This document shows positions 15,444-41,869 of a DNA stretch of 64,000 nucleotides, piece by piece. Numbering within the stretch: the stretch's first letter is position 1; every line of letters starts with the position of its first letter. Source of the stretch: Ostrea edulis (Eukaryota). The translations under genes and the position numbers were made by a program. The stretch lies in contig NC_079165.1 of the NCBI RefSeq assembly GCF_947568905.1, forward strand, positions 89,156,001 to 89,220,000, in the 5' to 3' direction. The notes under the pieces are model-generated. The model ran no database searches. It was not told the origin of the DNA and worked only from the letters and a program-made list of their open reading frames with translations.

Positions 15444-18400
15444 TGACACCCCCCCCCCCCCACCACCACCACCACCACAACCAAAACTATAATTCTACCA
15501 CTGTTACTTCTAAAACTACATTGGAATCTAAAAATATCAAAAATCAATAAATGTAATACTGTACCTCTTGTTAAAATGTACACTGGGGTCCACTCTAGAG
15601 GGGTCAGTGGTCAGTCTAGTGTTGTCTTTGTAATCACTGGACTTTTCAGGAATCTGGAATTTGGCTATCTGTACCTCTGTGTCACTCAAACCACCATGTG
15701 TTATACGGGCATAGCCCCGTCTGATTAATAAAATCAATTATTTCAATCATAAACTAGTCTCTTCAAATAGATGTGTCAGAATAAAAAAATTCCTCGTGAA
15801 TTCCATTTGTTCATTCATTCATTGTTAAATGATCAGGAATTTTGATGCTCCCTGATTGGTCCAAACAATCTTTTGTGGTGTGTACCTCAAAGTGAGTTCA
15901 CCTCAATATTAACGTTGGGAGGTTTATTCAGGAATTTCCCTCTTGACCAACCGTAGCTTTGCTGACATTGTTATCGACCAATCAAATTGCGTAATTTTTA
16001 GCATTTATCGATAAATAAAATTCGATGCAGTTAGCTTTACCAAACACCACCACGTAAATATGTGAGAATAAATTTTATCACTGTTATAGTTCCTAGATAA
16101 CTGTTGAAAAATTCCTGTCAGATCATTTAATAAAGGAATTATTGACTTTTGATTCCATCCACTCACAGCTATACAGACCTCATCAAAAGCCAATAATAGT
16201 ATATTGGTAGTATCATTCATGTAACACTAAAATGAAATCTATGTATACTGTACCAAAAACAGAACATTAGGGGCTGTGAAGAACATTATCATCATTTGAT
16301 TTTCTCCAACACTTAGCACTTACTTCTTGAGTCCTCTGTACATAATGTATTCACACCATCTGTCTCGGTCTGTCTCATCAATGTCCTTGACATTGCCATT
16401 TGTCAGGAGTTCATGGTAGTCACGACTACCGGGGGCAGAGGTCACATAGCCAAGGAAAACTACTGGATTTTTACTAAAAAACGAAAATAAATTTTAAGAA
16501 TGATTAGGTATAAGGAAAACAAGGTTTTCCTTTAGAAATGAAATAGTGTGTCTTTCATCACAATGTTTTACTAGGCACAAAATTTTATCTTTAAAGTTTA
16601 CCAATTTGATATCATATGATACTTGTGTTTTGATTTTGACCTAAATATACACATACTTGACCTAATTATACACCTGAATGAGTATTGACTTGAAAATAGC
16701 TCTGTTTGAGTCATGACATGTAGATATAGAATTCTCACATTGCTGCCACTTGATTCATCACTATACCACCATGCTTTGTCACAAACATTTAAATGCATAT
16801 TATCAAACTATCCATCAATAAGCTATACATTCTCTTTATGCCTTTGTCATATGGCCACATTTTCCAAATCAAAAAAAAAACATGGCGCTTTGACTGCACC
16901 TCTCTTCTTCCCTTTGTCTGAGTAATGACATGGATTTCACTCTGTCTGAGTAATGCAGGGCTTGAACCTAACTTTTTTTGTCACTAGTCCAGCCAGACTG
17001 ATCGGGGTATAATTTCAACCAGTCCGCAGAAAATTTACCAGTCCAACAGAGTTTTCCAGAAATAATTAAACATATTTAATTTCGTTAATGTTATTAAAAT
17101 GAAATTTAGCTCAATATGTCTCAGACAATATTGTAACACTTAAATGTGGGATTTATTTTTATACCCCCCCTCCCCCCCCCCCCCCCCCCCCCCCCCCGAA
17201 CAAAGTTCTGGGGGGTATATAGGAATCACTCTGTCTGTCCGTCTGTCTATGCAGATTCGTGTCCGGGCCATAACTTCTTTGTTCTTTGACTTAGGCATAC
17301 CATATTTGGCACACAGGTGGATCACCATTAGACGATGTGTCGAGTACTTTCATGACCTTTATATGACCTTGACCCCAAGGTCAAAATTAAAGGGTTTTTT
17401 TTTACAGTGGATTCGTGTCCGGGCCTTAACTTTTTTGTTCTTTGACATAGGGATACCATATTTGACACATGAGTGTATCACCATGAGACGATGTGTCATG
17501 TACCTTTATGACCTCCATATGACCTTGACCTCAAGGTCAAAATTAAAGGTTCTTACAATGGATTCATGTCAGGGCTATGACTTCTTTGTTCTTTGACATA
17601 GGCATATCATATTTGAGACATGAGTGTATCACCATGAAACGATGTGTCCAGTACCTTCATGACCTTTATATGACCTTGAACTTTTACCTCAAGGTCAAAA
17701 TTGATTATAGGATTTTGACATAGTCATACCATAAAACATGAGTGTATCACCATGAGACTATGTGACATGTACATTCATGACCTCTTTATGACCTTGACCT
17801 TTGATCTCTAGGTCAACATTATAGGTTTATGCCATGGATTTGTGTTCGGACTATATCTTCCATTTTCTTCTACAAAAGCATACCATATTTTTACACTCAG
17901 GAAAGAGGTAATTTATACCTATTAACAACACTCTTTGGGAGATTGGGGTAAGCAGGGGGTATTCTTAGTTAGCATTGCTCACAGTACCTCTACAGATCGA
18001 AGCATGCCAAATGTGTGTATAAGATTTCATAAGTATATGCTTTAGAAAATTAACCAGTCCCACTGGACTTACTAAAACAAATGTATGTCAGTCCGCCAGA
18101 TTTTTAACCAGTCATAGACTGACGGGCATATGTTAATTTCGAGCCCTGTAATGACATAGATATCACTCTGTCTGAGTAATGACATAGATATCTCTCTGTC
18201 TGAGTAATGACATAAATATCACCCTGTCTGAGTAATGACATAAATATCACCCTGTCTGAGTAATGACATAGATATCTCTCTGTCTGAGTAATGACATAAA
18301 TATCTCTCTGTCTGAGTAATGACATAGATATCACTCTGAGTAATGACATAGATATTGCTCTGTCTGAGTAATGACATAGATATCGCTGTCTGAGTAATGA

Positions 18401-21400
18401 CATAGATAACACTCTGTCTGAGTAATGACATAGATATCACTCTGTCTGAGTAATGACATAGATATCACTCTGTCTGTGTAATGACATAGATATCGCTGTC
18501 TGAGTAATGACATAGATAACACTGTCTGAGTAATGACATAGATATCACTCTGTCTGAGTAATGACATAGATAACACTCTGAGTAATGACATAGATATCAC
18601 TCTGTCTGAGTAATGACATAGATATCACTATGTCTGAGTAATGACATAGATATCTCTCTGTCTCAGTAATGACAGATATCACTCTGTCTGAATAATGACA
18701 TAGATATCACTCTGTCTGAGTAATGACATAGATATCACTCTGTCTGAGTAATGATATAGATATCGCTCTGTCTGAGTAATGACATAGATATTGCTCTGTC
18801 TGAGTAATGACATAGATATCACTCTGTCTGAGTAATGACATAGATATAACTCTGTCTGAGTAATGACATAGATATCTCTCTGTCTGAGTAATGACATAGA
18901 TATCGCTCTGTCTGAGTAATGACATAAATATCACTCTGTCTGTGTAATGACATAGATATCGCTCTGTCTAAGTAATGACATAGATATCACTGTCTGAATA
19001 ATGACATAGATATCACTCTGTCTGAGTAATGACATAGATATCACTCTGTCTGAGTAATGACATAGATATCATTTTGTCTCAGTAATGATATAGATATCGC
19101 TTTGTCTGAGTAATGACATAAATATCTCTCTGTCTGAGTAATGACATAGATATCACTCTGTCTCAGTAATGACATAGATAACACTCTGTCTGAGTAATGA
19201 CATAGATAACACTCTGTCTGAGTAATGACATAGATATCACTCTGTCTGAGTAATGACATAGATATCACTCTGTCTGAGTAATGACATAAATATCTCTCTG
19301 TCTCAGTAATGACATAAATATCGCTTTGTCTGAGTAATGACATAGATATCACTCTGTCTAAGGAATGACATAGATATCACTCTGTCTCAGTAATGACATA
19401 AATATCACTCTGTCTGAGTAATGACATAGATATAACTCTGTCTGAGTAATGACATAGATAACACTCTGTCTGAGTAATGACATAGATATCACTCTGTCTG
19501 AGTAATGACATAGATATCACTCTGTCTGAGTAATGACATAGATATCTCTCTGTCTGTGTAATGACATAAATATCACTCTGTCTGAGTAATGACATAGATA
19601 TCACTCTGTCTGAGTAATGACATAGATATCTCTCTGTCTGAGTAATGACATAGATATCACTCTGTCTGAGTAATGACATAGATATGTCTCTGTCTGAGTA
19701 ATGACATAGATATCACTCTGTCTGAGTAATGACATAAATATCACTCTGTCTGAGTAATGACATAGATATCACTCTGTCTGAGTAATGACATAAATATCAC
19801 TCTGTCTGAGTAATGACATAAATATCACTCTGTCTGAGTAATGACATAGATATCACTCTGTCTGAGTAATGACATAAATATCTCTCTGTCTGAGTAATGA
19901 TATAGATATCACTCTGTCTCAGTAATGACATAGATAACACTCTGTCTGAGTAATGACATAGATATCACTCTGTCTGAGTAATGACATAGATATCACTCTG
20001 AGTAATGACATAGATATCACTCTGTCTCAGTAATGACATAGATAACACTCTGTCTGAGTAATGACATAGATATCACTCTGTCTGAGTAATGACATATATA
20101 GACATCTGAGTGTAATATTGATCTAGATATTGACCTCTCTCTTAGCTCCTTAGCGAGGAATTTGGCTTGTAGTTTTCGGTCCAGCACATCTCTATCATTC
20201 CCCATGTGAGTCACCACAAAGTCGACATGCTTCCCTCCATAGTTCACAGTGGCGGTGATGGCTGGGGCGAGTTCCCCTGTAGAATTAACAAAGGTACTAA
20301 TGTCTTACAGAATCTCCACAAACATACCAACAATATGTCATTGTTGCACCCGGAGGCACTGATGATACAATATTAAGTTTTTAGATACTTCTGACTTGAC
20401 TTACTGTGTGGTGAGGGCAGCAGATGGTGGGTGGACTTGATTTACCGTGTGGTGAGGGCAGCAGATGGTGGGTGGACTTGACTTACCGTGAGGTGAGGGC
20501 AGCAGATGGTGGGTGGACTTGACTTACCGTGAGGTGAGGGCAGCAGATGGTGGGTGGACTTGACTTACCGTGAGGTGAGGGCAGCAGATGGTGGGTGGAC
20601 TTGACTTACCGTGAGGTGAGGGCAGCAGATGGTGGGTGGACTTGACTTACCGTGAGGTGAGGGCGGCAGATGGTGGGTGGACTTGACTTACCGTGTGGTG
20701 AGGGCAGCAGATGGTGGGTGGACTTGACTTACCGTGTGGTGAGGGTAGCAGATGGTGGATGGACTTGACAATTGGATACTTCGATAAAATTAGGTTCCTG
20801 TCAAAAATACAACACTTCATATACATGTAGCTAGCTCATTTATTAATTTTTTTTTCAATGTTATTTTATAAAGATACATGTTTGTGCAGATGTGTAAATT
20901 ATTTATATCCTAGTGTGTGTTTTGTTTTATACAGAATAAAGCTGTTCATCTCCTCCATGTGTGTTTTGTTTACAGAATTAAGTTGTTTACTTCCTCATTG
21001 TGTGTTTTCTTTACAGAACTAAGTGTGCATTTTGGTTGCAGGTCCAATAAACTAAATGAGTCATTTACCCCCAGGTGTGCGTTTTGGTTGCAGGTCCAAT
21101 AAACTAAATGAGTCATTTACCCCCAGGTGTGCGTTTTGGTTGCAGGTCCAAAGTCCACATACATTCCTAGCTTCTCTCCTAGCCACATCCCAAGGTCATT
21201 GTTGCCGAGGAACGGTTTGGAGGCATCGCTTTCCAAGAGGGTCACAAAATCTGCCCCTTAATTATTCATCAACAAACTTTAAAGTCTTAGTGCATGACAT
21301 GTATGTATTAGAACAGTGAAATTGTCTGAATGTGTCAATTACTGTACATGAAAAAAAAAATCACCATTTTAATCCTTAACAACACAAATGTGATAGAATT

Positions 21401-27421: not shown

Positions 27422-30400
27422 ATGGATGTTTTATTGATGCTGCTGTCCCTTGTGGGCGTGGCAGTTACTTTAGCAATTTGTGTAAGTACATACCACACTT
27501 TAAGGATTTGTTTTACAATTAACCTGTAGCTTATCAGATGTCATCATCTAATGCATGATGACATTAGAACCGAATCTTGCAACTGCAAGCGTAACATATG
27601 TAAGAGACTGTTGTCAGTTTACATACTTTCAACAACTCTATAGCATAGTCTTATCAGGCTGTGCGTATGGAACAATTTGAAATGGGCTAAATGTTTTAAT
27701 TGTGGCGGTCAGCCGGGTTCGATCGCCGGTGGCCAGTTAGCTCGGTAGAACGCCTGGATGGGGATTCGGGTTCGAATCCCGGTCTGGTCCGTTGCATTTT
27801 CTCCCTTCGTGTTACATTTGGTGCCGTATACCAGCCCCTGGAACTAACAGGTGAAAATGCCTGCTTGGGGATTTAAGATCCTGGGTTGATGTGATTATTG
27901 TCTTTTGGTGTGAAGACATTTAAGGAGGGAGGAATGTGGCGGTCAGCCAGGCTCGATCGTCGGTGGCCAGTTAGTTCAGTTGGTAGAGCACCTGGCTGGG
28001 GATTCGGGGGGGGGTTGAATCCCGGTCTGGCCCATTGCATTTTCTCCCTTCCTGTTACATAGTCAAACGCACTCTTAGTTAGAACATTTCGACGGGATGC
28101 TTACTCATCTTAGGCACAGGGTTTTGACACAATCTGAGCAAACTGGTATACATGTACATAGTGCTCACTATATATACCAGTTTGCTCAGATTGTGTCAAA
28201 ACCCTCTGATCCCATCTCTGGTTTGTCCAGGCCAGGGGTCCTTGTTTACCCTACTCTTAATTTTGTATCCTAAATATAGGAGCTATTAGATTGATCTCTG
28301 TTCGTTTTCGTCACCTTTTCATTATCTAGGTACTTTTTAAGAAATCAAATTAAAAGAAAAAAAGAAAGAAAACAACCAGGAGGAAGGGCTATCTAATTGA
28401 TGTACATATGGTGTGTACATTGTGAGATTGTGTTCAAATCAGTGATTTTCAAAACATTTTATGGAAAATACAAGCAATAGAACAATATGTAGTTATTGAT
28501 AAAGACATTTTAAAATATTTCAATTTAATTTATTACATAAAACTGTCAAGTGAGGTAATTATTTTATATTGATTGTTGAAACACTCTTCAAAAAATATTC
28601 TAGTCTGAGGCAAGAAAACATAGAAATGAAATTTAGATATAAGTATTTGAAATCAGTGTGCACATGTTCATGAGATCGATCTGTGTACTGGACGTGCAGA
28701 TTGTCTTTGGAAATTACTGGTGTGTGGGTACGTATTGCTTTTTGTATCACTTGCCCCCTCCCCAAATAGATTGATTGATTGGTTATCAGGGCTTGAAGGT
28801 AACTTTTTATATCACCAGTCCAGCCGGACTGATGGGGTATAATTTCAACCAGTCCACAGAAAAATTTACCAGTCCAACAGAGTTTTCCAGAAATAATTAA
28901 ACATATTTCATTAATGTTCTTGAAATGAAATTTAACTCAATATGCCTCAGAAAATATTGTAACACTAATGTGAGATTTATGTTTATTAATCGGGTTCGTC
29001 TAATAACAGAAGCATGCCAAATATGTGGATAAGATTTCATAAGTATATTTTCCAAAATGATGCTTTAAAAATTTAAACAGTTCTATCGGACCGACTAAAA
29101 CAAATGTTGGTCAGTCCGCCAGACTTTTAACCAGTCACAGACTGACAGGATATTGTTTAATGTCCCTCTTGAGAATATTTCACTCATATGGAGACGTCAC
29201 CACTGTTGGTGAAGGGCTGCAAAATTTAGGCCTATGCTCGGTGCTTGCGGTCTTTGAGCAGGGAGGGATCTTTATTGTGCCACACCTGCTGTGACACAGG
29301 ACCTCGGTTTTTGTGGTCTCATCCAAAGGACCGCCCCATATAGTCGCCTCTTACGACAAGCAAGGGGTACTGAGGACCTATTCTAACCCGGATCACCAAA
29401 GGACCCCCAAATAGAAGTGGTTTTCATACAGCATGAACTTAGGTAATGCTATTTGTCTAGCCCTAAAAAGTAATCCCATTTCATATTGCAGGCGTTAATT
29501 ATTGTGGCCATGTCAACGAAGCCATATCCAGATTTAGGAAGGTATGAGACTGAGAAATATTTTTTAAATGAGAAACACGAGAAGTGTCTGTTCCCATCAA
29601 TCAACGACCCAGCCAGTGTGGAGCTTTCGGTGATTGTACCAGCATACAACGAGGAGGAGAGATGTACGTATATTATATTGAAAACTTCATTCAGACTAAT
29701 TCATTAACATGATTAATGGATAAATTAGTAAATAGCCGATTTCTTTGTAGTACCAGTTATGATGGATGAAGCATTAGGATTTTTGGAGGATAGAAAGGTA
29801 TGTTTGTTATAGATCCAAAGATAATCATATCTTGGAAGTTAGTCAAACTTTGTCAAATTATCTTTTTGGTCCAAAGTGAAATTTGGGTACATTTGAATAT
29901 TGGTTTACAGTAATGTGAGAGAGTATGTCTTTCATTTTGTTATTAAGGTGTTTTTCTTTGTACTTAGAAAAAATCCAGATCCTTTAGTTATGAGGTGATT
30001 GTTGTCGATGATGGAAGCAAAGATAAAACTACACAAGTAAGTCACATTGTTTTATTCTGCTTGAATTTGATGGATTTATAATTTTTCAGATTTAAGTTCA
30101 TTTTTAGTTGTTTTCCCCCCTAAACAATAAAGATAAGTGTTTAGAACATTAAAAAGACTTTTGCATTTTTTGGAAAAAGAATTAAATTGATTTTCATATT
30201 TTCCAGACAGCACAAAGTTATTGCAATAAATATGGATCTGAAAAAGTGCGTGTGTTGACTCTAGCAAAGAATCGTGGGAAAGGTGGTGCCATAAGATTGG
30301 TCAGTAAACATTACTAAATCGCTGTTACACAGTAATTAATATACAGAAAGATCTTTCTTTGTTCAGATAGGACAGTGTAATGATATTTCCGTGTATGAAT

Positions 30401-33400
30401 GAATGTAACCAATGTCTCTGTGTCTTCCCAACAACTTCTCATAATTTTCACTCTGATTAAAATCAAACCTCTCACTCAATATACGGACATGCAGCGATTG
30501 TCTGTATATTGAGTGAAGTGAGAGGTTTGATTTTGATTAGACTGCATCATTTTATTTTATTTTGTTGATTGTTTTAAGTTTTGGCATTTCACAAGTGTAA
30601 TAATTTTTATCAGGGAATGTTTTCTGCTCGGGGACGATTCCTGTTGTTTGCAGATGCCGATGGTGCAAGTAAATTTAGTGACTTTACAAAGCTGGAGAGT
30701 GAAATGAAGAACGTAAATAAGAATAGTACTAACAGGGCAGTGGTGTGTGGTTCTCGGGCACACCTGGAGGAGGAGTCAATCGCACAGGTAAACACAGGAT
30801 AAATTCACTCAGTTACACAGGTAACACAGGTGATGTCAGTTACATAGGTAAACACAGGATGTCAATCCCACAGGTGAACACAGGATCCATGTCAATCACA
30901 CAGGTAACACAGGATACATGTCAATCACACAGGTAACACAGGATACATGTCAATCACACAGGTAACACAGGATACATGTCAATCACACAGGTAACACAGG
31001 ATACATGTCAATCACACAGGATACATGTCAATCACACAGGTAAACACAGGATACATGTCAATCACACAGGATCCATGTCAATCACACAGGTGAACACAGG
31101 ATACATGTCAATCACACAGGTAACACAGGATACATGTCAATCACACAGGTAACACAGGATACATGTCAATCACACAGGATACATGTCAATCACACAGGTA
31201 ACACAGGATACATGTCAATCACACAGGATACATGTCAATCACACAGGTAAACACAGGATACATGTCAATCACACAGGATACATGTCAATCACACAGGTAA
31301 CACAGGATACATGTCAATCACACAGGATACATGTCAATCACACAGGTAAACACAGGATACATGTCAATCACACAGGTAAACACAGGATACATGTCAATCA
31401 CACAGGATACATGTCAATCACACAGATAACACAGGATACATGTCAATCACACAGGATACATGTCAATCACACAGGATACATGTCAATCACACAGGTAACA
31501 CAGGATACATGTCAATCACACAGGATACATGTCAATCACACAGGTAAACACAGGATACATGTCAATCACACAGGTAAACACAGGATACATGTCAATCACA
31601 CAGGATACATGTCAATCACACAGATAACACAGGATACATGTCAATCACACAGGATACATGTCAATCACACAGGATACATGTCAATCACACAGGATACATG
31701 TCAATCACACAAATCACACAGGATACATGTCAATCACACAGATAACACAGGATACATGTCAATCACACAGGTAACACAGGATACATGTCAATCACACAGG
31801 ATACATGTCAATCACACAGATAACACAGGATACATGTCAATCACACAGGTAACACAGGATACATGTCAATCACACAGGTAACACAGGATACATGTCAATC
31901 ACACAGGATACATGTCAATCACACAGGATACATGTCAATCACACAGGTAACACAGGATACATGTCAATCACACAGGTAAACACAGGATACATGTCAATCA
32001 CACAGGATACATGTCAATCACACAGGATACATGTCAATCACACAGGTAACACAGGATACATGTCAATCACACAGGTAACACAGGATACATGTCAATCACA
32101 CAGGTAACACAGGATACATGTCAATCAAGGTAAGATGAAGTGTGGGTTCATCATAAGTCTTGCTAGATGCCTCGCCTCCTCATGGATTGTAATGTACATT
32201 TTCAATGTGGAGGATAATTGACAGAGAAAGACTAGATGAGGACTTTGAAATTGAAATTTGTAAATGACAGTCCTAAAATTTTGATAATCATTAGATGTGA
32301 GCAGTCTGGATATTCTTAAGGTGAAATACACTCTCACACAAATATATACACATACACACACATGAATATGCTATATAAATTCAGGAGTTGTCTTCCTTTA
32401 TGAAATGATGACTTGAAATTTGCATGAAGGAGTTACATTTCTTTATAAAGACAGTTGATCAAAATTAAAATTTTTAGTGCTTATATTTTATATTCTACAA
32501 TTACCCAAGGCTACATCTGGGAGACAGACCCAGGTCCTCCCCCCCCCCCCCCCTTAAGCTCATTATCCTAAACTCCTACTGCTTTTATTGAGGCCAAGCA
32601 CATCTGTTATTTGATGCACTAATAACTGTATGCAGAATGCCAATAAAAATTATGGATACAAAATATATGCTTGTGCAATTATCAATTGCTATCGTATATT
32701 AATACACAATATGACATAATAATTTATGCTTTTTGTTGTGTACAACGAAGTTTCAAATATTTCAGTGCAACCATAAATTTGCACTCTTGCTTCAGTGCCA
32801 AGGGTGCTCGAGTATAAAGCCCACTAGAATAAAAATACACACATTTAAATTAGTACATTTTATATGCAAAAATATTGGGGTTTTTTTTTTACAGCAGTTG
32901 ATTACAGTATCTATGACTGCGATTTTTATGGTTTGAATTTGCACTTTCTTTCCAGAGATCTATGTTTAGGACGTTCTTGATGAAAGGATTCCACTTTGTG
33001 GTGTGGTTTCTGTGTGTGCGAGGAATCAAGGATACACAATGTGGATTTAAACTCCTGACAAGAGAGGCAGCAATCCTTCTCTTCTCCAATCTACATGTAG
33101 AGAGATGGTAAGATTGATTTTAACTCCTAACAAGATAGACAGCAATATTTACATGTAGAGAGATGGTCAGATTGATTTTAACTTCTGACAAGAGAGGCGG
33201 TAATCCTCCTCTTCTCCAATCTACATCTTGAGAGATGGTAAGATTGATTTTAACTTCTGACAAGAGAGACGGCAATATTTACATCTAGAGAGATGGTCAG
33301 ATTGATTTTAACTCCTAACAAAATAGACAGCAATATTTACATCTAGAGAGATGGTAAGATTGATTTTAACTTCTGACAAGAGAGACGGCAATATTTACAT

Positions 33401-36400
33401 CTAGAGAGATGGTCAGATTGATTTTAACTTCTGACAAGAGAGGCGCAATCCTCCTCTTCTCCAATCTACATCTAGAGAGATGGTAAGATTGATTTTAACT
33501 TCTGACAAGAGAGACGGCAATATTTACATCTAGAGAGATGGTCAGATTGATTTTAACTTCTGACAAGAGAGACGTCAATATTTACATCTAGAGAGATGGT
33601 CAGATTGATTTTAACTTCTGACAAGAGAGACTGCAATATTTACATCTAGAGAGATGGTCAGATTGATTTTAACTCCTAACAAAATAGACAGCAATATTTA
33701 CATCTAGAGAGATGGTCAGATTGATTTTAACTCCTGACAAGAGAGGTGGCAATATTTACATCTAGAGAGATGTAAGATTGATTTTAACTTCTGACAAGAG
33801 AGGCAGCAAACCTTCTCTTCTCCAATCAACATTTAGAGAGATGGTAAGATTGGTTTTGATGATTTTGGTCTAGGGTGCAAGGATATTGAATCACAATACA
33901 AAGGTCTGGATTTTATATCTGCAATTTTTATTAATTAGAAAAAACTTAGCAAACAAGACAGGTAATGGAAAAGAAGCATACAAGTTACAAAGAAAATGTG
34001 TGCCAATGCAGAGCTACATGAATCATTATACATACACCCGAGTCTGTTGGTTTGATATGTTTGAAACTTTCCATCAGATAGAACAGACTGTAACTGGATA
34101 ATTGCCTGTGGTTCATCACGTAATTTATAACAGTGTGTTGTTTTTACAGGGCCTTTGATGTAGATAGGCTGTTCCTAGCTCAGTACTTTATAACCATGTG
34201 TTGTTTTTACAGGGCCTTTGATGTAGATATTCCCAGCTCAGTACTTTTAACCAATTGTTATTTTTACAGGGCTTTTAATGTAGATAGGCTGTTCCTAGCT
34301 CAGTACTTTATAACAGTGTGTTGTTTTTACAGGGCCTTTGATGTAGATAGGCTGTTCCTAGATCAGTACTTTATAACTGTGTGTTGTTTTTACAGGGCCT
34401 TTGATGTAGATAGGCTGTTCCTAGCTCAGTACTTTATAACAGTGTGTTATTTTTACAGGGCCTTTGATGTAGATAGGCTGTTCCTAGCTCAGTACTTTAT
34501 AACAGTGTGTTGTTTTTACAGGGCCTTTGATGTGGGTACCTGTAAAGTGCGAAACGAAACGAAACCCACCGAAATGAAACGAAGCAGATTGAACAACCGA
34601 ACTCTTTTAATTATAGTAATTAAAAATGGTATTTTAGGCCCCTGTGAAAGTTACCACATACAAATAAAATTTGCCTCCCTTTTGATGTAGGCTTTGGGCT
34701 TGACTGTTACAAAGTTTTAAAAATTGGAATGGGGGGGGGGGGGGGGTTGGGGGGTTGAGTAAGCAAAACGTACATATCCGAAGTTGATTAAATACCATGT
34801 ACAATTGGTTTCAGATCCATAAATTTCAGAACGGAGGGTTACAGTCTCACAGGTCAGAGGTCATAACGAGGGGTGGGGTCGCCGGCGCTGGATCCGCCTT
34901 TGGGCATAAATACATGTTTCAGTGTTTTTTGCTCTAAAGACAAATCTATGTATACATGTGGATATTGTGTATTTGTATGTAGTATATCAAACAGTGGATT
35001 CTGAGTATGTCCTCCCGTTCTCTTTGTAATTTATGCTTCCCTTGTTCATAAGCCTTTTGATTTTACAAAATAGCTGACTTCCTCCTGATATTATTGCATA
35101 AAACAATTTCCGTTTTCCGTCCCGTTTTCAATTTCACGTCTTAGCAACACCCCAAATGTATAGAGTTATCTTTAGACTCACTACATATCAATAATAATTT
35201 TTAATAATACATGTATATATATCTTACCGAATTGCATTCATATAATATGGTATACTATTTAATTTATTTCATTATTGAAAGTACTCGCACCTAAGCAGTT
35301 AGAGATAAAATGAGAGGTTAAGAGCTCTTCCTGCTTTCAACTTTCTCAGACACCAGCTTCTTCAAACAATGTATCTATACCCAAAGGCGGATCCAACGCC
35401 GGTGACCCCCACCCCCTCGTTTAGTGTGTTTCCCCAGACCTCTGAGACTGTAACCCTCCGTTCTGAAATTTACTGATCCGAAACTAATTTCACATGGTAT
35501 TTAATCAACTTCGGATATGTACTTTGTCCTTACTCACCCCCCCCCCCCTCCCCACTTCCAACTTTTAAAACTTTGTATCAGTCAAGCCCAAAGCCTACAT
35601 CAAAGGGGAGGCGAATTTTATTTATCTGTTGTAACTTTCACAGGGGCCTAAGATATCATTTTTAATTATTTTAATTTAAAAAGTTCAGTTATACAATCTG
35701 TTTCGTTTCGGTGGGTTTCATTTCGTTTTGGTAGATTTCGTTTCATTTCGGTAGATTTCGTTTCGTTTCGATCTTTACAGGTACCCCCTTTGATGTAGAT
35801 ATGCTGTTCCTTGCTCAGTACTTTAAAACTGTGTTGTTTTTACAGGGCCTTTGATGTAGATATTCCAGCTCAGTACTTTTTAACAGTGTGTTGTTTTTAC
35901 AGGGCCTTTGATGTAGATATGCTGTTCCTAGCTGAGTACTTTATAACTGTGTGTTGTTTTTACAGGGCCTTTGATGTAGATCTGCTGTTCACCTAGCTCA
36001 GTACTTTATAACAGTGTGTTGTTTTTACAGGGCCTTTGATGTAGATCTGCTGTTCACCTAGCTCAGTACTTTATAACAGTGTGTTGTTTTTACAGGCCTT
36101 TGATGTAGATCTGCTGTTCACCAAGCTCAGTACTTTATAACTGTGTGTTGTTTTTACAGGGCCTTTGATGTAGATATTCCCAGCTCAGTACTTTATAACA
36201 GTGTGTTGTTTTTACAGGACCTTTGATGTAGATATTCCCAGCTCAGTACTTTATAACAGTGTGTTGTTTTTACAGGGCCTTTGATGTAGATATTCCCAGC
36301 TCAGTACTTTATAACTGTGTGTTGTTTTTACAGGGCCTTTGATGTAGATATGCTGTTCCTAGCTCAGTACTTTATTACTGTGTGTTGTTTTTACAGGGCC

Positions 36401-36760
36401 TTTGATGTAGATATGCTGTTCCTAGCTCAGTACTTTAACATTCCAGTAGGAGAGGTAGCCATTACCTGGACAGAAATTGAAGGTCTGTAAACTGTTCATT
36501 ATATCTGTAATTTCTTTTGTCTGATTCCCAGTGTTTTGTCCGCAATACGCTGTATCAATGTATTTATATGCTACCATTGTTTCTATCTCCCCCATAATAC
36601 AAACAATCTATGCATATTTTATCAATTTCCATTTTTTATTTCAGGTTCAAAAATGGTTCCTGTTTTTTCCTGGATTCAGATGGGCAAGGACATTATTTTA
36701 ATACGACTGCGATATTTTCTAGGAGCATGGAAGATTAACCAGAAATCCAAAGTAGAATAA
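27422..36760 (+). CDS. ALG5: Dolichyl-phosphate beta-glucosyltransferase, 9 exons, 322 aa
   Basis: Exons: 27422-27481, 29492-29663, 29751-29797, 29968-30036, 30207-30299, 30614-30787, 32956-33107, 36397-36482, 36645-36760 (TAA); 969 nt. GT2 motifs: [66 protein letters not shown]. Confidence 0.97.
27701..28059 (+). mobile_element. TRIM with tRNA-like LTRs (Helenus-type)
   Basis: TGT..ACA LTRs at 27701-27816 and 27935-28059; PBS TGGTGCCGT; PPT TAAGGAGGGAGGAA; A/B-box-like motifs in LTRs; flanks TAAT/TAGT. Confidence 0.8.
28090..28322 (+). mobile_element. Retroelement 3' remnant homologous to 13110-13305, interrupted by a hairpin insertion
   Basis: Sequence correspondence with the 13.1 kb copy. 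Confidence 0.55.
28118..28205. mobile_element. 88-bp hairpin insertion with perfect 33-bp arms and a 22-nt loop
   Basis: AGGGTTTTGACACAATCTGAGCAAACTGGTATA and its exact reverse complement. Confidence 0.85.
28787..29150. mobile_element. Second, truncated copy of the CAGGGCTTGAA TIR family
   Basis: Colinear with 16956-17150 and 17995-18120. Confidence 0.75.
29150..29405. mobile_element. SINE-like interspersed repeat (homolog of 15213-15445)
   Basis: Shared sequence of about 230 bp. Confidence 0.65.
30788..32127. repeat. 20/29/30-bp satellite in ALG5 intron 6, derived from the exon 6 end plus donor
   Basis: Unit GTCAATCACACAG-GTAA(A)CACAG-GATACAT versus the true junction GTCAATCGCACAG|GTAAACACAGGATA. 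Confidence 0.95.
33108..33852. repeat. 58/72-bp tandem array (about 12 copies) of the ALG5 exon 7 end plus donor
   Basis: The long unit reproduces about 60 nt of the exon (CTCCTGACAAGAGAGGCAGCAATCC...GAGAGATG) plus GTAAGATTGATT. Confidence 0.95.
34128..36435. repeat. 58-66-bp tandem array (about 17 copies) of the ALG5 intron 7 acceptor plus exon 8 start
   Basis: Unit TGTGTTGTTTTTACAG|GGCCTTTGATGTAGAT...CTCAGTACTTT; the last unit is the real exon. Confidence 0.95.
34534..35786. mobile_element. Non-autonomous Mutator-like (MULE) foldback element
   Basis: About 390-bp imperfect TIRs starting GGGTACCTGTAAAG / CTTTACAGGTACCC; 10-bp TSD CCTTTGATGT at 34524-34533 and 35787-35796. Confidence 0.85.
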
Positions 36761-38637: not shown

Positions 38638-41600
38638 ATAATGTACATAAACGGATATATAAAACGGCTACCAGTTAATGACGATGCCTATGATGTGGAT
38701 GTAGCAGTTGGGGAAAGACACAGTAGAGATAAGACTTTAGATAGTAGAGGAAAAGAATTATTAGAATTATGTATTGCAAACAAGCTTAGAATAGCCAACG
38801 GTAGAACATTTGGTGATATATATGGGAAATTTACATGTCATAATTATGCTGGTTCCAGTGTGGTAGACTACTTCATTGTATCTGAACAGTTGTTAGAAGA
38901 TGTCTTGTATGTACATGTATCTGATTTTTTACCTTTATCTGACTGCCATTGTAAAATCTCAATGAAACTTTTATCATCATTTGAAAGGGAGTATACATGT
39001 GACAACATGCAGGAGATGCCCAAACGATACAATTGGGATAGTTTATCTATAGGAAACTTTCAAAAAATTTTCATGCATCCAACCGTTCAGAATGATATAA
39101 AGCTTTATTTAAACACACCGATAGAGTATAATGAACAAAGTATAAACAAGGCCACCAACGACATTCACAAAATCCTAAACAAAGTAGCTAAACTATCTTT
39201 ACAAAGAAAAACACAACATAGAAACACAACCAATAAAAAAGAGAAAATACTTATTTGAGAAAGCAACTTTACTTTCAAGATTTCCCAATAACCCTTACTT
39301 ACGAAGTTCCTTTTTCAAATTAAATAAGGAATATGCCAAGCTGCGGAAACGTAAAAAGCGAGAATTCAGGCAGGGTATTCTAGATAAACTAGATCAAATG
39401 AATGAAACTAATCCTAAAGAATATTGGAAATTAGTTAAATCGCTTCGCGAAAATGAAGGGAAAAAAGATAATTTAGAGAAGTGTATTGATGGGGATACAT
39501 GGTTTGACTATTTTACTTCTCTGTCTAAATTACCAGATCATTACAAGGACAGAGTTAAGACTATAGAAGCCGGAATTAATAAACTTAAAAATAGCCAGAC
39601 CTGTAAGTCGTTTAGCAAATTGGATTTCAAGATATCTTTGTCTGAAATTCAAAAGGCCATATCTACTTTAAAGTCGGGTAAAAGTCCTGGTTTAGACAAC
39701 ATCTCAAATGAAATGATAAAAGCAGCTCAAATATATATAAATCCTTGTATCTCAAAACTATTCAATATGGTCTTAACATCAGGAATCTATCCAGAAAAAT
39801 GGTTAGAAGGTTATACAACACCCATCTTTAAATCGGATAATCCAAAGCTCCCCCAAAACTATAGAGGAATAACTATAACTAACAGCATAGCGAAACTTTT
39901 TAATATCATTTTTAACGGCAGGCTTGATACATTCTTAACTGAAAACAAAATAATACACGAGAGTCAAATAGGATTTTCAAAAAAACCAGGACATTTATTT
40001 GTAGTTAAATGTTTAATTGACAAATACATTAACACTGGCAATAAACGACTCTATGCATGTTTTGTAGACTTTCACAAGGCATTTGATACCGTCATTCATG
40101 AAGGCATTAAACTAAAACTCCTACAATTAAATATCAATGGTTTATTCTACAACATATTATGTAGTATGTATAGGCACAACAATATTTTCATAAAAGTAGG
40201 GAACAAGTTAACCCTTCCATATACACCAGAGATAGTTCGTCAAGGTGATGTCTTAAGCCCAAATATTTTTGAACGATTTTTCCAAATTACTGGATGAAGA
40301 AACCATTGGCTCTATCAATCTTTCTGGAAAGAAAATCACCTCTCTTCTATATGCGGACGATTTTGTACTGCTTTCAGAAAACCAAAATGGACTACAAAAC
40401 AAACTAAACTTACTTGAAAAATATTGCAACGATTGGTGCTTAGAAATTAATACCATTAAGACAAAAGTAGTCATTTTTAATAAAAGCGGACACCTAATTA
40501 AAGAAAATTTTGTGTTCGGTAACATACGTATTGAATGTACTAACAAATATTATCCTCCTGTGGTTCATTCAAGGAAGCAAAATCTGATCTATACAATAAA
40601 GCTCTTAAGGCCTCATTCAAACTTTATAAAGACATCAAATCTATCGATCCACCAATTAAAACATTTTTGCATCTTTTTGACCATATGGTAAAACCCATCG
40701 CCTTGTATGGCTGCGAGATATGGGGAACACTCTCAACACGCATGCTGGAAAAAGACAGAGATTTATATATCTTTAAAAATTGGGAGGTAGAAAACCTGAA
40801 TATTAAGTTTTGTAAACATCTACTGGGTGCCGGTAAAAGAAGTACTAATATTGCAATAATCTCTAAATTGGGTAGATATCCTATGTTCTGCTCTATAATC
40901 CAAAGTATTTTAAAATACTATATTGGCATAGACTTGAGAATTGCCCAGAATCATCCCTGTTATACAGTGCTTACATGTATATAGAGAATATCAATCTGAA
41001 TTCATATAATATAAATTGTTGGTACAAAAACATTAATTACTTTAAGGAAAAAATTGGCATTTTGGTACCCAATTGTAAAAATCTCAAATTCTCATTTTTC
41101 AAAAAACAAATGAAGAATCAGGTACGGAAACAATTTTTACTTTACTGGTCAAAACGACGTGAAGAGGGTCAGAAATCAGGAAAACTCACAACATATTTTT
41201 CGTATAAAGAAAACTTTACTATGGAAAGTTATATATTTTTAGAATCCCTAGAATTAAGAAAAACTCTATGTAGATTTCGAATTAGTGCACATGACCTTCG
41301 AATTGAAAGAGGAAGATATGAATTTACAAAAACCAATTCTGGCCAGAAGATTTCTTTAGAAAGAAACAAAAGAATATGTGAATTATGTAACCTTAATTGT
41401 GTTGAAGATGAATTTCATTTCCTTACTGATTGTCCATTCTATGTTGAAGAGAGAAATATGTTTTTTAATGGTATATACAAGCTCAACAAAATTTTTATCT
41501 ATCTAACAAATAAGGACAAATTTACTTGGTTGATGATTAATGAAGACAAACCAGTAATTGTCAAATTGAGTGAATATTTAGTGCAAACTTTCAGAAAAAG

Positions 41601-41869
41601 AAGTAATGCTTTAAAACTGCAAAAATAATTATAGTTTATTATTCATATATTGGTATGATACTGATACTGTCCATCTACTTGTATATATACATGATTATAG
41701 CAATTCATATATGTATGTACTTGTTTCCCCAACATGCTGCATCCACATGCAGTCTATGTAACCTGTAGTTAATGTTGTAAACTTTCTTTCTTTTTTGAAT
41801 TTCCTTCTTTATAAACTGTCTTACTGTTATGCCCTCTGGGACCAAAATTGGAATAAACTTATCTTATCT
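38638..41869 (+). mobile_element. 5'-truncated, frameshifted non-LTR retrotransposon (APE endonuclease C-terminus, RT, C-terminal Cys/His motif); clade not determined (RTE-X or L2/CR1-type candidates)
   Basis: GSSVVDYFIVS (APE); YRGITI, QIGF, FVDFHKAFD, RQGDVLSP, YADD (RT); RFRISAHDLRIERGRY...CELC...EDEFHFLTDC; AATAAA plus TTATC tail. ORF split into five pieces. Confidence 0.95.

What the first reader, a model, noticed from the sequence alone, without database searches (positions are those of the whole stretch)
34128..36482. About 16 decoy acceptors before ALG5 exon 8; the nearest gives an in-frame +21 aa isoform
Each unit has a TATAAC-like putative branch motif, a T-rich tract and ACAG|G. 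The acceptor at 36333/36334 lies exactly 63 nt upstream of the real one (36396/36397) and the interval is stop-free. Its use would give [38 protein letters not shown], duplicating the conserved WAFDV segment of the glycosyltransferase. Distant decoys are probably disfavoured by exon definition (inference).
Basis: partly seen in the sequence, partly recalled or inferred. Interest (0 to 1): 0.75.

Follow-up and report, generated by a model that had tools for sequence, protein, structure and literature searches.

The report
Splice-junction minisatellite in oyster ALG5
In the flat oyster's ALG5 gene, a 63-base piece spanning the end of intron 7 and the start of exon 8 has been copied head-to-tail 16 times, leaving 16 spare splice acceptors; this kind of repeat ("mirage" minisatellite) is known from amphioxus and a human gene, and I found no evidence here for the proposed +21-residue protein.

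Summary
Exactly 16 array-borne acceptors (T5-ACAG|G) lie upstream of the real exon 8 acceptor of Ostrea edulis ALG5. The nearest (36333/36334) is 63 nt upstream, in frame and stop-free, and differs from the real unit at 1 of 63 bases.

This is a minisatellite whose unit is the gene's own intron 7/exon 8 junction (23 nt intron + 40 nt exon). A 1,253-bp foldback transposon later split it in two. The same intron starts with 12 copies of the exon 7 donor junction, and intron 6 starts with about 27 decoy donors. About 92% of intron 7 is junction copies plus the transposon. Magallana gigas, Crassostrea virginica and Saccostrea echinata share the intron position but have no acceptor array.

Fifteen of the 16 decoys give a premature stop. 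NCBI's isoform X2 (286 aa) uses decoy 35903. That is also the most upstream site matching real exon 8 for 31 nt, so X2 may be a read-alignment artefact. No model or protein fragment shows the +21 aa form, which would add a second copy of helix 258-268 in one of ALG5's most conserved stretches.

The scan noted the same kind of array elsewhere in this genome. This is a new member of a known kind.

The parts
32956..33107 (+). ALG5 exon 7; ends ...GAGAGATG and leaves the W256 codon split TG|G (phase 2)
   Evidence: 100% tblastn match to NCBI X1 residues 205-256; splice flanks ttccag| and |gtaaga
33044..33857 (+). Donor-side junction array: 58- and about 75-bp units copying the last part of exon 7 plus the first 8 nt of the intron; real donor at 33108 plus 12 decoy donors
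   Evidence: TRF rows; 13 GT[AC]AGATTG sites listed. Reading on past 33107 gives TGG TAA, an immediate stop
33858..34119 (+). Only non-repeated part of intron 7 (about 260 nt)
   Evidence: Lies between the TRF arrays
34120..34533 (+). Distal block of the acceptor-junction array: 7 decoy acceptors, mostly the ATAGG (Met to Arg) variant; the last unit is cut by the transposon
34534..35786 (.). 1,253-bp foldback transposon-like insert with terminal inverted repeats starting GGGTACCTGTAAAG and arms of about 380 nt at 83-92% complementarity. It is flanked by a 10-bp direct repeat CCTTTGATGT (34524-34533 and 35787-35796) taken from the array unit
   Evidence: RNA fold -613.5 kcal/mol; flanks read
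35787..36396 (+). Proximal block of the acceptor-junction array: 9 decoy acceptors in three unit variants (57/58, 63 and 64/65 nt)
35903..35996 (+). Decoy used in NCBI isoform X2: acceptor 35902/35903, 30 extra residues, then TAG at 35994-35996
   Evidence: The X2 tail (residues 257-286) equals the translation from 35904 and matches no other acceptor
36311..36373 (+). Nearest decoy unit (acceptor 36333/36334), 62/63 identical to the real unit; its use would add 63 nt / 21 aa in frame
36397..36482 (+). ALG5 exon 8 (real acceptor 36396/36397, donor 36482|gtctgt)
   Evidence: X1 residues 257-285
36645..36760 (+). ALG5 exon 9, coding part up to the stop codon

Best explanation
This is a 'mirage'-type minisatellite. 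A 63-bp stretch straddling the 3' splice site of ALG5 intron 7 (last 23 nt of the intron plus first 40 nt of exon 8) was duplicated in tandem and then amplified, presumably by replication slippage or unequal exchange. Every new copy lies upstream of the real junction, so it sits inside the intron. Only the last copy is continuous with the rest of exon 8 and its donor, and that copy makes the functional mRNA (X1, 322 aa). A foldback transposon later landed in one unit and split the array. The same process acted on the exon 7 donor and the exon 6 donor, so intron 7 grew from roughly 300 nt to 3.3 kb, mostly out of copies of its own borders. The spare acceptors have no assigned role. Use of 15 of them gives a premature stop and presumably a decayed or truncated product. 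Use of the nearest would give +21 aa inside a conserved helix and is at best a minor product. The anatomy, the lineage-specific origin and the coding consequences are shown. The amplification mechanism, the choice of the last acceptor through pairing with the exon 8 donor 86 nt downstream (exon definition), and the decay of mis-spliced RNA are inferred.
For: The unit is the junction itself: 16 aligned units have 91% mean column identity, and the last decoy differs from the real unit at 1 of 63 positions. The arrays score 693 and 961 in TRF. The motif count is 17 in the region against 0.39 expected in the window. The orthologous genes of M. gigas, C. virginica and S. echinata have the intron at the same codon and a single acceptor, with no array, and their intron 7 is 0.6-1.1 kb. 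The decoy 'exon' parts carry Met-to-Arg changes, 5-nt deletions and 2-nt insertions, while the real copy keeps the peptide conserved in all oysters, so the decoys show no coding constraint. The transposon has a 10-bp target duplication made of unit sequence, so the array predates it. Sister arrays sit on the exon 7 and exon 6 donors. NCBI's full-length product X1 uses the last acceptor. [quoted passage not shown]
Against: No reads could be laid, so I do not know what share of transcripts uses decoys. NCBI does model one decoy isoform (X2), so the decoys may not be silent. Old duplicated-site experiments quoted in PMC1557585 reported use of only the 'proximal' copy of duplicated sites; on a 5'-to-3' scanning reading that favours an upstream acceptor, which would not predict choice of the last copy. 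Arrays sit on junctions more often in this region than a naive random model suggests (6-7 arrays in two genes), and plain slippage does not by itself explain that.
Confidence: 0.8

Rival explanations
1. One reading: the nearest decoy (36334) is used at an appreciable level and yields a real ALG5 protein isoform with 21 extra residues.
For: The site is identical to the real one from -19 to +41, and its branch-like motif (ATAAC) is slightly closer to consensus than the real unit's ATTAC. The product is in frame, so it would escape nonsense-mediated decay. The resulting exon would be 149 nt, a normal size.
Against: NCBI models X1 and X2 but no +21 form, although an in-frame stable isoform should be the easiest to detect. 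No such protein or fragment was returned by the searches of the 5.8-billion-protein collection. The insertion falls in a block invariant across 29 ALG5 proteins from molluscs to fish and would add a second copy of helix 258-268 joined by a hydrophobic Cys-rich linker. Analogous repeats in amphioxus and human F7 do not disturb splicing (PMC3087553, PMC1557585).
Confidence: 0.08
2. The array is a regulatory device: unproductive splicing to decoys, followed by decay, tunes ALG5 output, or the decoys act as a sink for splicing factors.
For: Fifteen of the 16 decoys give premature stops. One such product is annotated as X2. All decoys keep intact AG and pyrimidine tracts.
Against: The array is absent from three other oyster genera with the same gene and intron. 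The intact signals are explained by the copies being young and homogenised, since their 'exon' parts decay freely. Similar arrays sit on unrelated junctions of neighbouring genes, which argues for a mutational habit of the genome and not gene-specific control. The X2 acceptor is exactly the one a shortest-intron tie-break would pick for reads with 19-31 nt of overhang.
Confidence: 0.05
3. The array, or its size, is an assembly artefact.
For: Short-read Logan contigs collapse the sister array in intron 6, so repeats here are hard to assemble.
Against: The units fall into four variant types arranged in blocks. A transposon with a clean target duplication interrupts one unit. The sequence lies on a 109-Mb chromosome-scale record that NCBI annotated through it. 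A mis-assembly would not create these features.
Confidence: 0.02

Closest known systems
[quoted passage not shown]
   Same: The repeat unit spans an exon-intron border and the real junction is the terminal unit. The copies keep AG/GT signals. Both 5' and 3' borders can be amplified. BflGb6 repeats the 3' end of an intron plus the 5' part of an exon, as here. Several genes of one genome are affected (PMC3087553, PMC3902484).
   Different: The phylum differs (mollusc, not cephalochordate). Here there are more copies (16 acceptors, 12 and about 27 donors), both borders of one intron are amplified, and a transposon splits the array. Normal splicing was shown by RT-PCR in amphioxus but is only inferred from annotation here. 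Length polymorphism, documented in amphioxus, is untested here.
Human F7 intron 7 37-bp VNTR, whose first unit spans the exon 7 donor
   Same: It is a minisatellite seeded on a splice junction. It gives 5-9 identical pseudo-sites that are functional in minigenes but silent in vivo, and the exon-adjacent copy is chosen (PMC1557585). This is the direct counterpart of the exon 7 and exon 6 donor arrays in this gene.
   Different: F7 concerns donors. The finding here concerns acceptors, for which the chosen copy is the last one transcribed, so 5'-to-3' scanning cannot be the explanation.
Intron gain or extension by internal tandem duplication containing splice signals (Rogers' model; Gao and Lynch 2009; Zhuo et al. 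2007), as cited in PMC3087553
   Same: Tandem duplication carries splice signals, and the extra copy is spliced out as intron, so the gene tolerates it.
   Different: No new intron is created here. An existing intron is lengthened about ten-fold.

Membership tests
Mirage-type (splice-junction-spanning) minisatellite | Head-to-tail tandem repeats of 10-160 bp | tested here: met
   TRF finds period 58-63 with 6.7 + 10.6 copies at 90-91% matches
Mirage-type (splice-junction-spanning) minisatellite | The unit contains an exon-intron border and the terminal unit is the authentic junction | tested here: met
   The unit is 23 nt of intron plus 40 nt of exon 8. The real unit aligns with the decoys over all 63 columns, and the exon is defined by the X1 match
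Mirage-type (splice-junction-spanning) minisatellite | The repeats retain splice signals | tested here: met
   AG is present in all 16, the pyrimidine tract columns are invariant or nearly so, and 15 of the 16 have AG|GG or AG|GA
Mirage-type (splice-junction-spanning) minisatellite | Regular splicing is not disturbed | not testable with these tools
The only evidence is that NCBI X1 uses the real site and X2 uses decoy 35903
Mirage-type (splice-junction-spanning) minisatellite | Copy-number instability or polymorphism between haplotypes | not testable with these tools
   No second O. edulis haplotype could be fetched. The ORF look-ups found nothing, and Logan contigs collapse such arrays
ALG5 (dolichyl-phosphate beta-glucosyltransferase, GT2) | Orthology to named ALG5 proteins over the full length | tested here: met
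   The window exons are 100% identical to NCBI O. edulis X1, 85-90% identical to other oysters and 60-68% to fish and starfish ALG5
ALG5 (dolichyl-phosphate beta-glucosyltransferase, GT2) | GT2 (GT-A) catalytic domain with a DxD motif and an N-terminal membrane helix | tested here: met
   Pfam PF00535 is precomputed on the protein. D161-A162-D163 is invariant. The model has helix 2-28 followed by an alpha/beta domain, pLDDT 81. The closest solved relatives are Dol-P-Man synthase 5mlz and GtrB 5ekp
ALG5 (dolichyl-phosphate beta-glucosyltransferase, GT2) | Glucosyl transfer to dolichyl phosphate | not testable with these tools
   This needs an enzyme assay or complementation experiment

The most novel reading that the evidence does not exclude
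Splice junctions in this oyster (and in amphioxus) may be preferred seeds for minisatellites because of a junction-linked mutational process, such as breaks or template switching tied to co-transcriptional splicing. Such arrays would then be a general engine of intron growth. At this locus, the near-perfect nearest decoy would additionally give a low-level +21 aa ALG5 variant. Neither idea is excluded by my data.
Probability: 0.08. Interest if true: 0.7.

Novelty: new member of a known kind. Interest (0 to 1): 0.38.

Why it matters
On its own this is a neutral-looking repeat in a housekeeping gene. Its value is as a natural test bed. One intron carries 12 copies of its donor and 16 copies of its acceptor, several of them identical to the real sites, yet the gene must still make a conserved enzyme. 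The human F7 repeat was used to work out how donors are chosen among identical copies, and this locus offers the acceptor-side equivalent. It also shows how an intron can grow ten-fold from copies of its own borders. It extends 'mirage' repeats from amphioxus to molluscs. And it warns that isoforms annotated inside such arrays (here X2) may be alignment artefacts.

Tried and rejected

2. Pfam and PDB scans of single exons gave nothing useful. Gene identity came from the word search, which returned the NCBI proteins.

3. I searched for O. edulis transcript-derived protein fragments across the exon 7/8/9 junctions. None were found; only other species appeared. The 90% cluster holds just X1, X2 and an exon 6 read-through ORF.

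4. Exact look-ups of two array ORFs in public contigs found nothing on record.

5. The Logan contigs L001 and L002 cover exon 6 and collapse the intron 6 array, so they cannot size arrays.

6. Two papers were not held: PMC117041 (original 'mirage' paper) and PMC1783408. They are cited only through PMC3087553.

7. I considered NAGNAG-type tandem acceptors and rejected them, because the spacing here is 57-65 nt, not 3.

8. I considered recursive splicing and rejected it, because joining exon 7 to a unit gives ATG|GGCC and regenerates no GT donor.

9. The joined +21 aa protein was neither folded nor searched. Exons were concatenated only inside scripts, to count frames and stops.

10. The large representative-protein search was not used because it was not needed.
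Full report
**What is there**

The window is Ostrea edulis DNA. Its + strand carries ALG5 (dolichyl-phosphate beta-glucosyltransferase). The nine coding exons (27422-27481, 29492-29663, 29751-29797, 29968-30036, 30207-30299, 30614-30787, 32956-33107, 36397-36482, 36645-36760) have canonical splice flanks. They match NCBI isoform X1 (P0121, 322 aa) at 100% identity. The protein carries Pfam GT2 (PF00535). It is 85-90% identical to other oyster ALG5 proteins and 60-68% identical to fish and starfish ALG5.

Between exon 7 and exon 8, TRF finds two arrays with one and the same 58-63-bp unit, at 34120-34533 and 35787-36437. The motif TTTTTACAGG occurs 17 times in this stretch, against 0.39 expected for the whole window.

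**What the unit is**

Sixteen units were aligned: the real junction unit and 15 decoys. The sixteenth decoy, at 34522, is cut by the transposon. Each unit is the last 23 nt of intron 7 plus the first 40 nt of exon 8. Mean column identity is 91%. The nearest decoy unit (36311-36373) differs from the real one (36374-36436) at one base, ATAAC versus ATTAC at -21.

There are four unit variants, and they sit in blocks:
- an ATAGG type (Met to Arg), which fills the distal block;
- a type with a 5-nt deletion;
- a type with a 2-nt insertion;
- the ATATG type, shared by 35903, 36334 and the real site.

So the decoys are not independent look-alikes. They are copies of the junction itself, that is, a minisatellite seeded on a splice site.

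**Interruption by a transposon**

Positions 34534-35786 are a 1,253-bp insert with inverted arms of about 380 nt at 83-92% complementarity. Its termini read GGGTACCTGTAAAG, and they occur nowhere else in the window. As RNA the insert folds into one long hairpin of -613.5 kcal/mol. It is flanked by a 10-bp direct repeat, CCTTTGATGT, which is unit sequence. The array therefore existed before the insertion. From the long inverted repeats and the 10-bp duplication I infer a Mutator-like or foldback non-autonomous element. No transposase was looked for. The right end of the insert supplies one more AG, at 35780/35781.

**The rest of the intron**

Exon 7's last part plus 8 nt of intron is itself repeated at 33044-33857. 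This gives the real donor at 33108 and 12 decoy donors. Intron 7 is 3,289 nt long:
- about 750 nt is donor-junction copies;
- about 1,017 nt is acceptor-junction copies;
- 1,253 nt is the transposon;
- only about 260-270 nt (33858 to about 34120) is unique.

Intron 6 also begins with a 1.35-kb array of 20/29-bp units copied from the exon 6 donor. It holds about 27 CAG|GTRA sites.

**Comparison with other oysters**

I fetched the orthologous loci of Magallana gigas (L003), Crassostrea virginica (L005) and Saccostrea echinata (L006). All three have the same intron between the codons for W256 and A257 and the same neighbouring gene on the other strand. Their intron 7 is about 1.1, 0.6 and 0.8 kb. 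Each has a single acceptor and no tandem repeat at that border. The acceptor array is therefore specific to the Ostrea lineage. The real exon 8 start keeps the peptide [16 protein letters not shown], which is conserved in all of these species, whereas the decoy copies carry replacements and frameshifts.

**Coding consequences**

I read on from exon 7 (TG|G) through each decoy to the exon 8 donor. Fifteen of the 16 hit a stop:
- the seven distal decoys stop at 34688, inside the transposon;
- the proximal ones stop within 4 to 50 codons;

Using any decoy donor gives TGG TAA, an immediate stop. Joining exon 7 to a unit creates no new GT, so a wrong choice cannot be repaired by a second splice (inference).

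**Evidence on usage**

The indirect evidence is as follows.

NCBI annotates two products. X1 uses the real acceptor. X2 (P0001, 286 aa) ends in 30 residues that match only the reading from decoy 35903, up to the TAG at 35994. This contradicts the strict statement that only 36397 is ever modelled.

However, X2 is weak evidence. 35903 is the most upstream acceptor whose downstream sequence matches real exon 8 for more than 18 nt (31 nt). An aligner that breaks ties in favour of the shorter intron would place true X1 reads with 19-31 nt of overhang exactly there. This is my inference, and which aligner NCBI used is from memory and was not checked.

No +21 aa model exists. The word searches found no O. 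edulis fragment carrying either junction form.

**Would +21 aa be tolerated?**

In an alignment of 29 ALG5 proteins, R255, W256, A257, F258, D259, V260, L263, A266 and Q267 are invariant. In an AlphaFold model of X1 (pLDDT 81, pTM 0.82), residues 258-268 form a helix that leads into strand 273-277. The insertion would add a second copy of this helix, joined by ITVCCFYR. I take this to be probably harmful, but the joined isoform was not folded or searched.

**Comparison with what is known**

[quoted passage not shown] They occur in Adh3, globins, troponin C and PGBD5. One globin gene repeats the 3' end of an intron plus the 5' part of an exon. RT-PCR showed normal splicing, and copy number differs between haplotypes (PMC3087553, PMC3902484).

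In human F7, a 37-bp VNTR whose first unit spans the exon 7 donor gives 5-9 identical pseudo-donors. These work in minigenes but are never used while the first one is intact (PMC1557585).

The ALG5 arrays meet the structural criteria of this kind. Splicing fidelity and polymorphism could not be tested. Full-text searches found no description of such repeats in bivalves.

Earlier notes of this scan report the same kind of array elsewhere in this genome and in the neighbouring gene. I checked only the neighbour. On the - strand, a 41-bp unit repeated 9 times holds CACG|GTAAGT behind a short exon, and a 52-bp unit repeated 2.5 times holds GGGG|GTAAAT.

**Mechanism**

The shown steps are that the unit equals the junction, that the array is lineage-specific, that it predates the transposon, and what each decoy would encode.

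The inferred steps are:
- origin by slippage or unequal exchange;
- selection of the last acceptor because it alone lies 86 nt from the exon 8 donor (exon definition), which is plausible but not proven, because the nearest decoy would still give a normal 149-nt exon;
- removal of mis-spliced RNA by nonsense-mediated decay.

On the origin, the array's upstream edge GTAATTTATAAC resembles the exon-derived GTACTTTA..AAC. This is either the seeding microhomology or simply a truncated first unit.

**Verdict**

The structure is a new member (new phylum, unusually large, on both borders of one intron) of a known kind of repeat. The +21 aa isoform is possible on paper and unsupported by any data available here.

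Noticed in passing
window 30775-32127: Intron 6 of ALG5 begins with a 1.35-kb array of 20/29-bp units copied from the exon 6 donor junction (CACAG|GTAA(A)CACAGGAT). About 27 decoy donors follow the real one at 30788.
   Followed up: partly
L006:4516-4660 (Saccostrea echinata ALG5): The orthologous exon 6 donor of S. echinata is also followed by about 5 copies of a 33-bp unit, each with (C/T)(A/T)G|GTAAAC. The unit length differs from that in O. edulis, so this is probably an independent expansion at the same junction. M. gigas and C. virginica show none.
   Followed up: partly
window 20393-20769 and 21023-21151, - strand: The neighbouring CWH43/PGAP2IP-like gene has a 41-bp x 9 array and a 52-bp x 2.5 array, each copying an exon end plus GTAAGT/GTAAAT. 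A 28-bp x 70 array (18148-20100) starts about 30 nt after another exon's donor.
   Followed up: partly
window 34534-35786: The foldback transposon-like insert has poly-G/poly-C cores and (CGAAA)n-like subterminal repeats. No other copy is in the window, and its family was not identified.
   Followed up: partly
window 38641-41628, + strand: A run of long ORFs lies downstream of ALG5, including one of 299 aa. By eye this resembles a degraded non-LTR retrotransposon, but no domain search was run.
   Followed up: no
L001 (Logan contig ERR13868516_366381): This short-read contig joins 29369-30898 directly to 32020-32531, collapsing the intron 6 array. This is an assembly effect, and it shows that such contigs cannot size these repeats.
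   Followed up: yes
   Followed up: no
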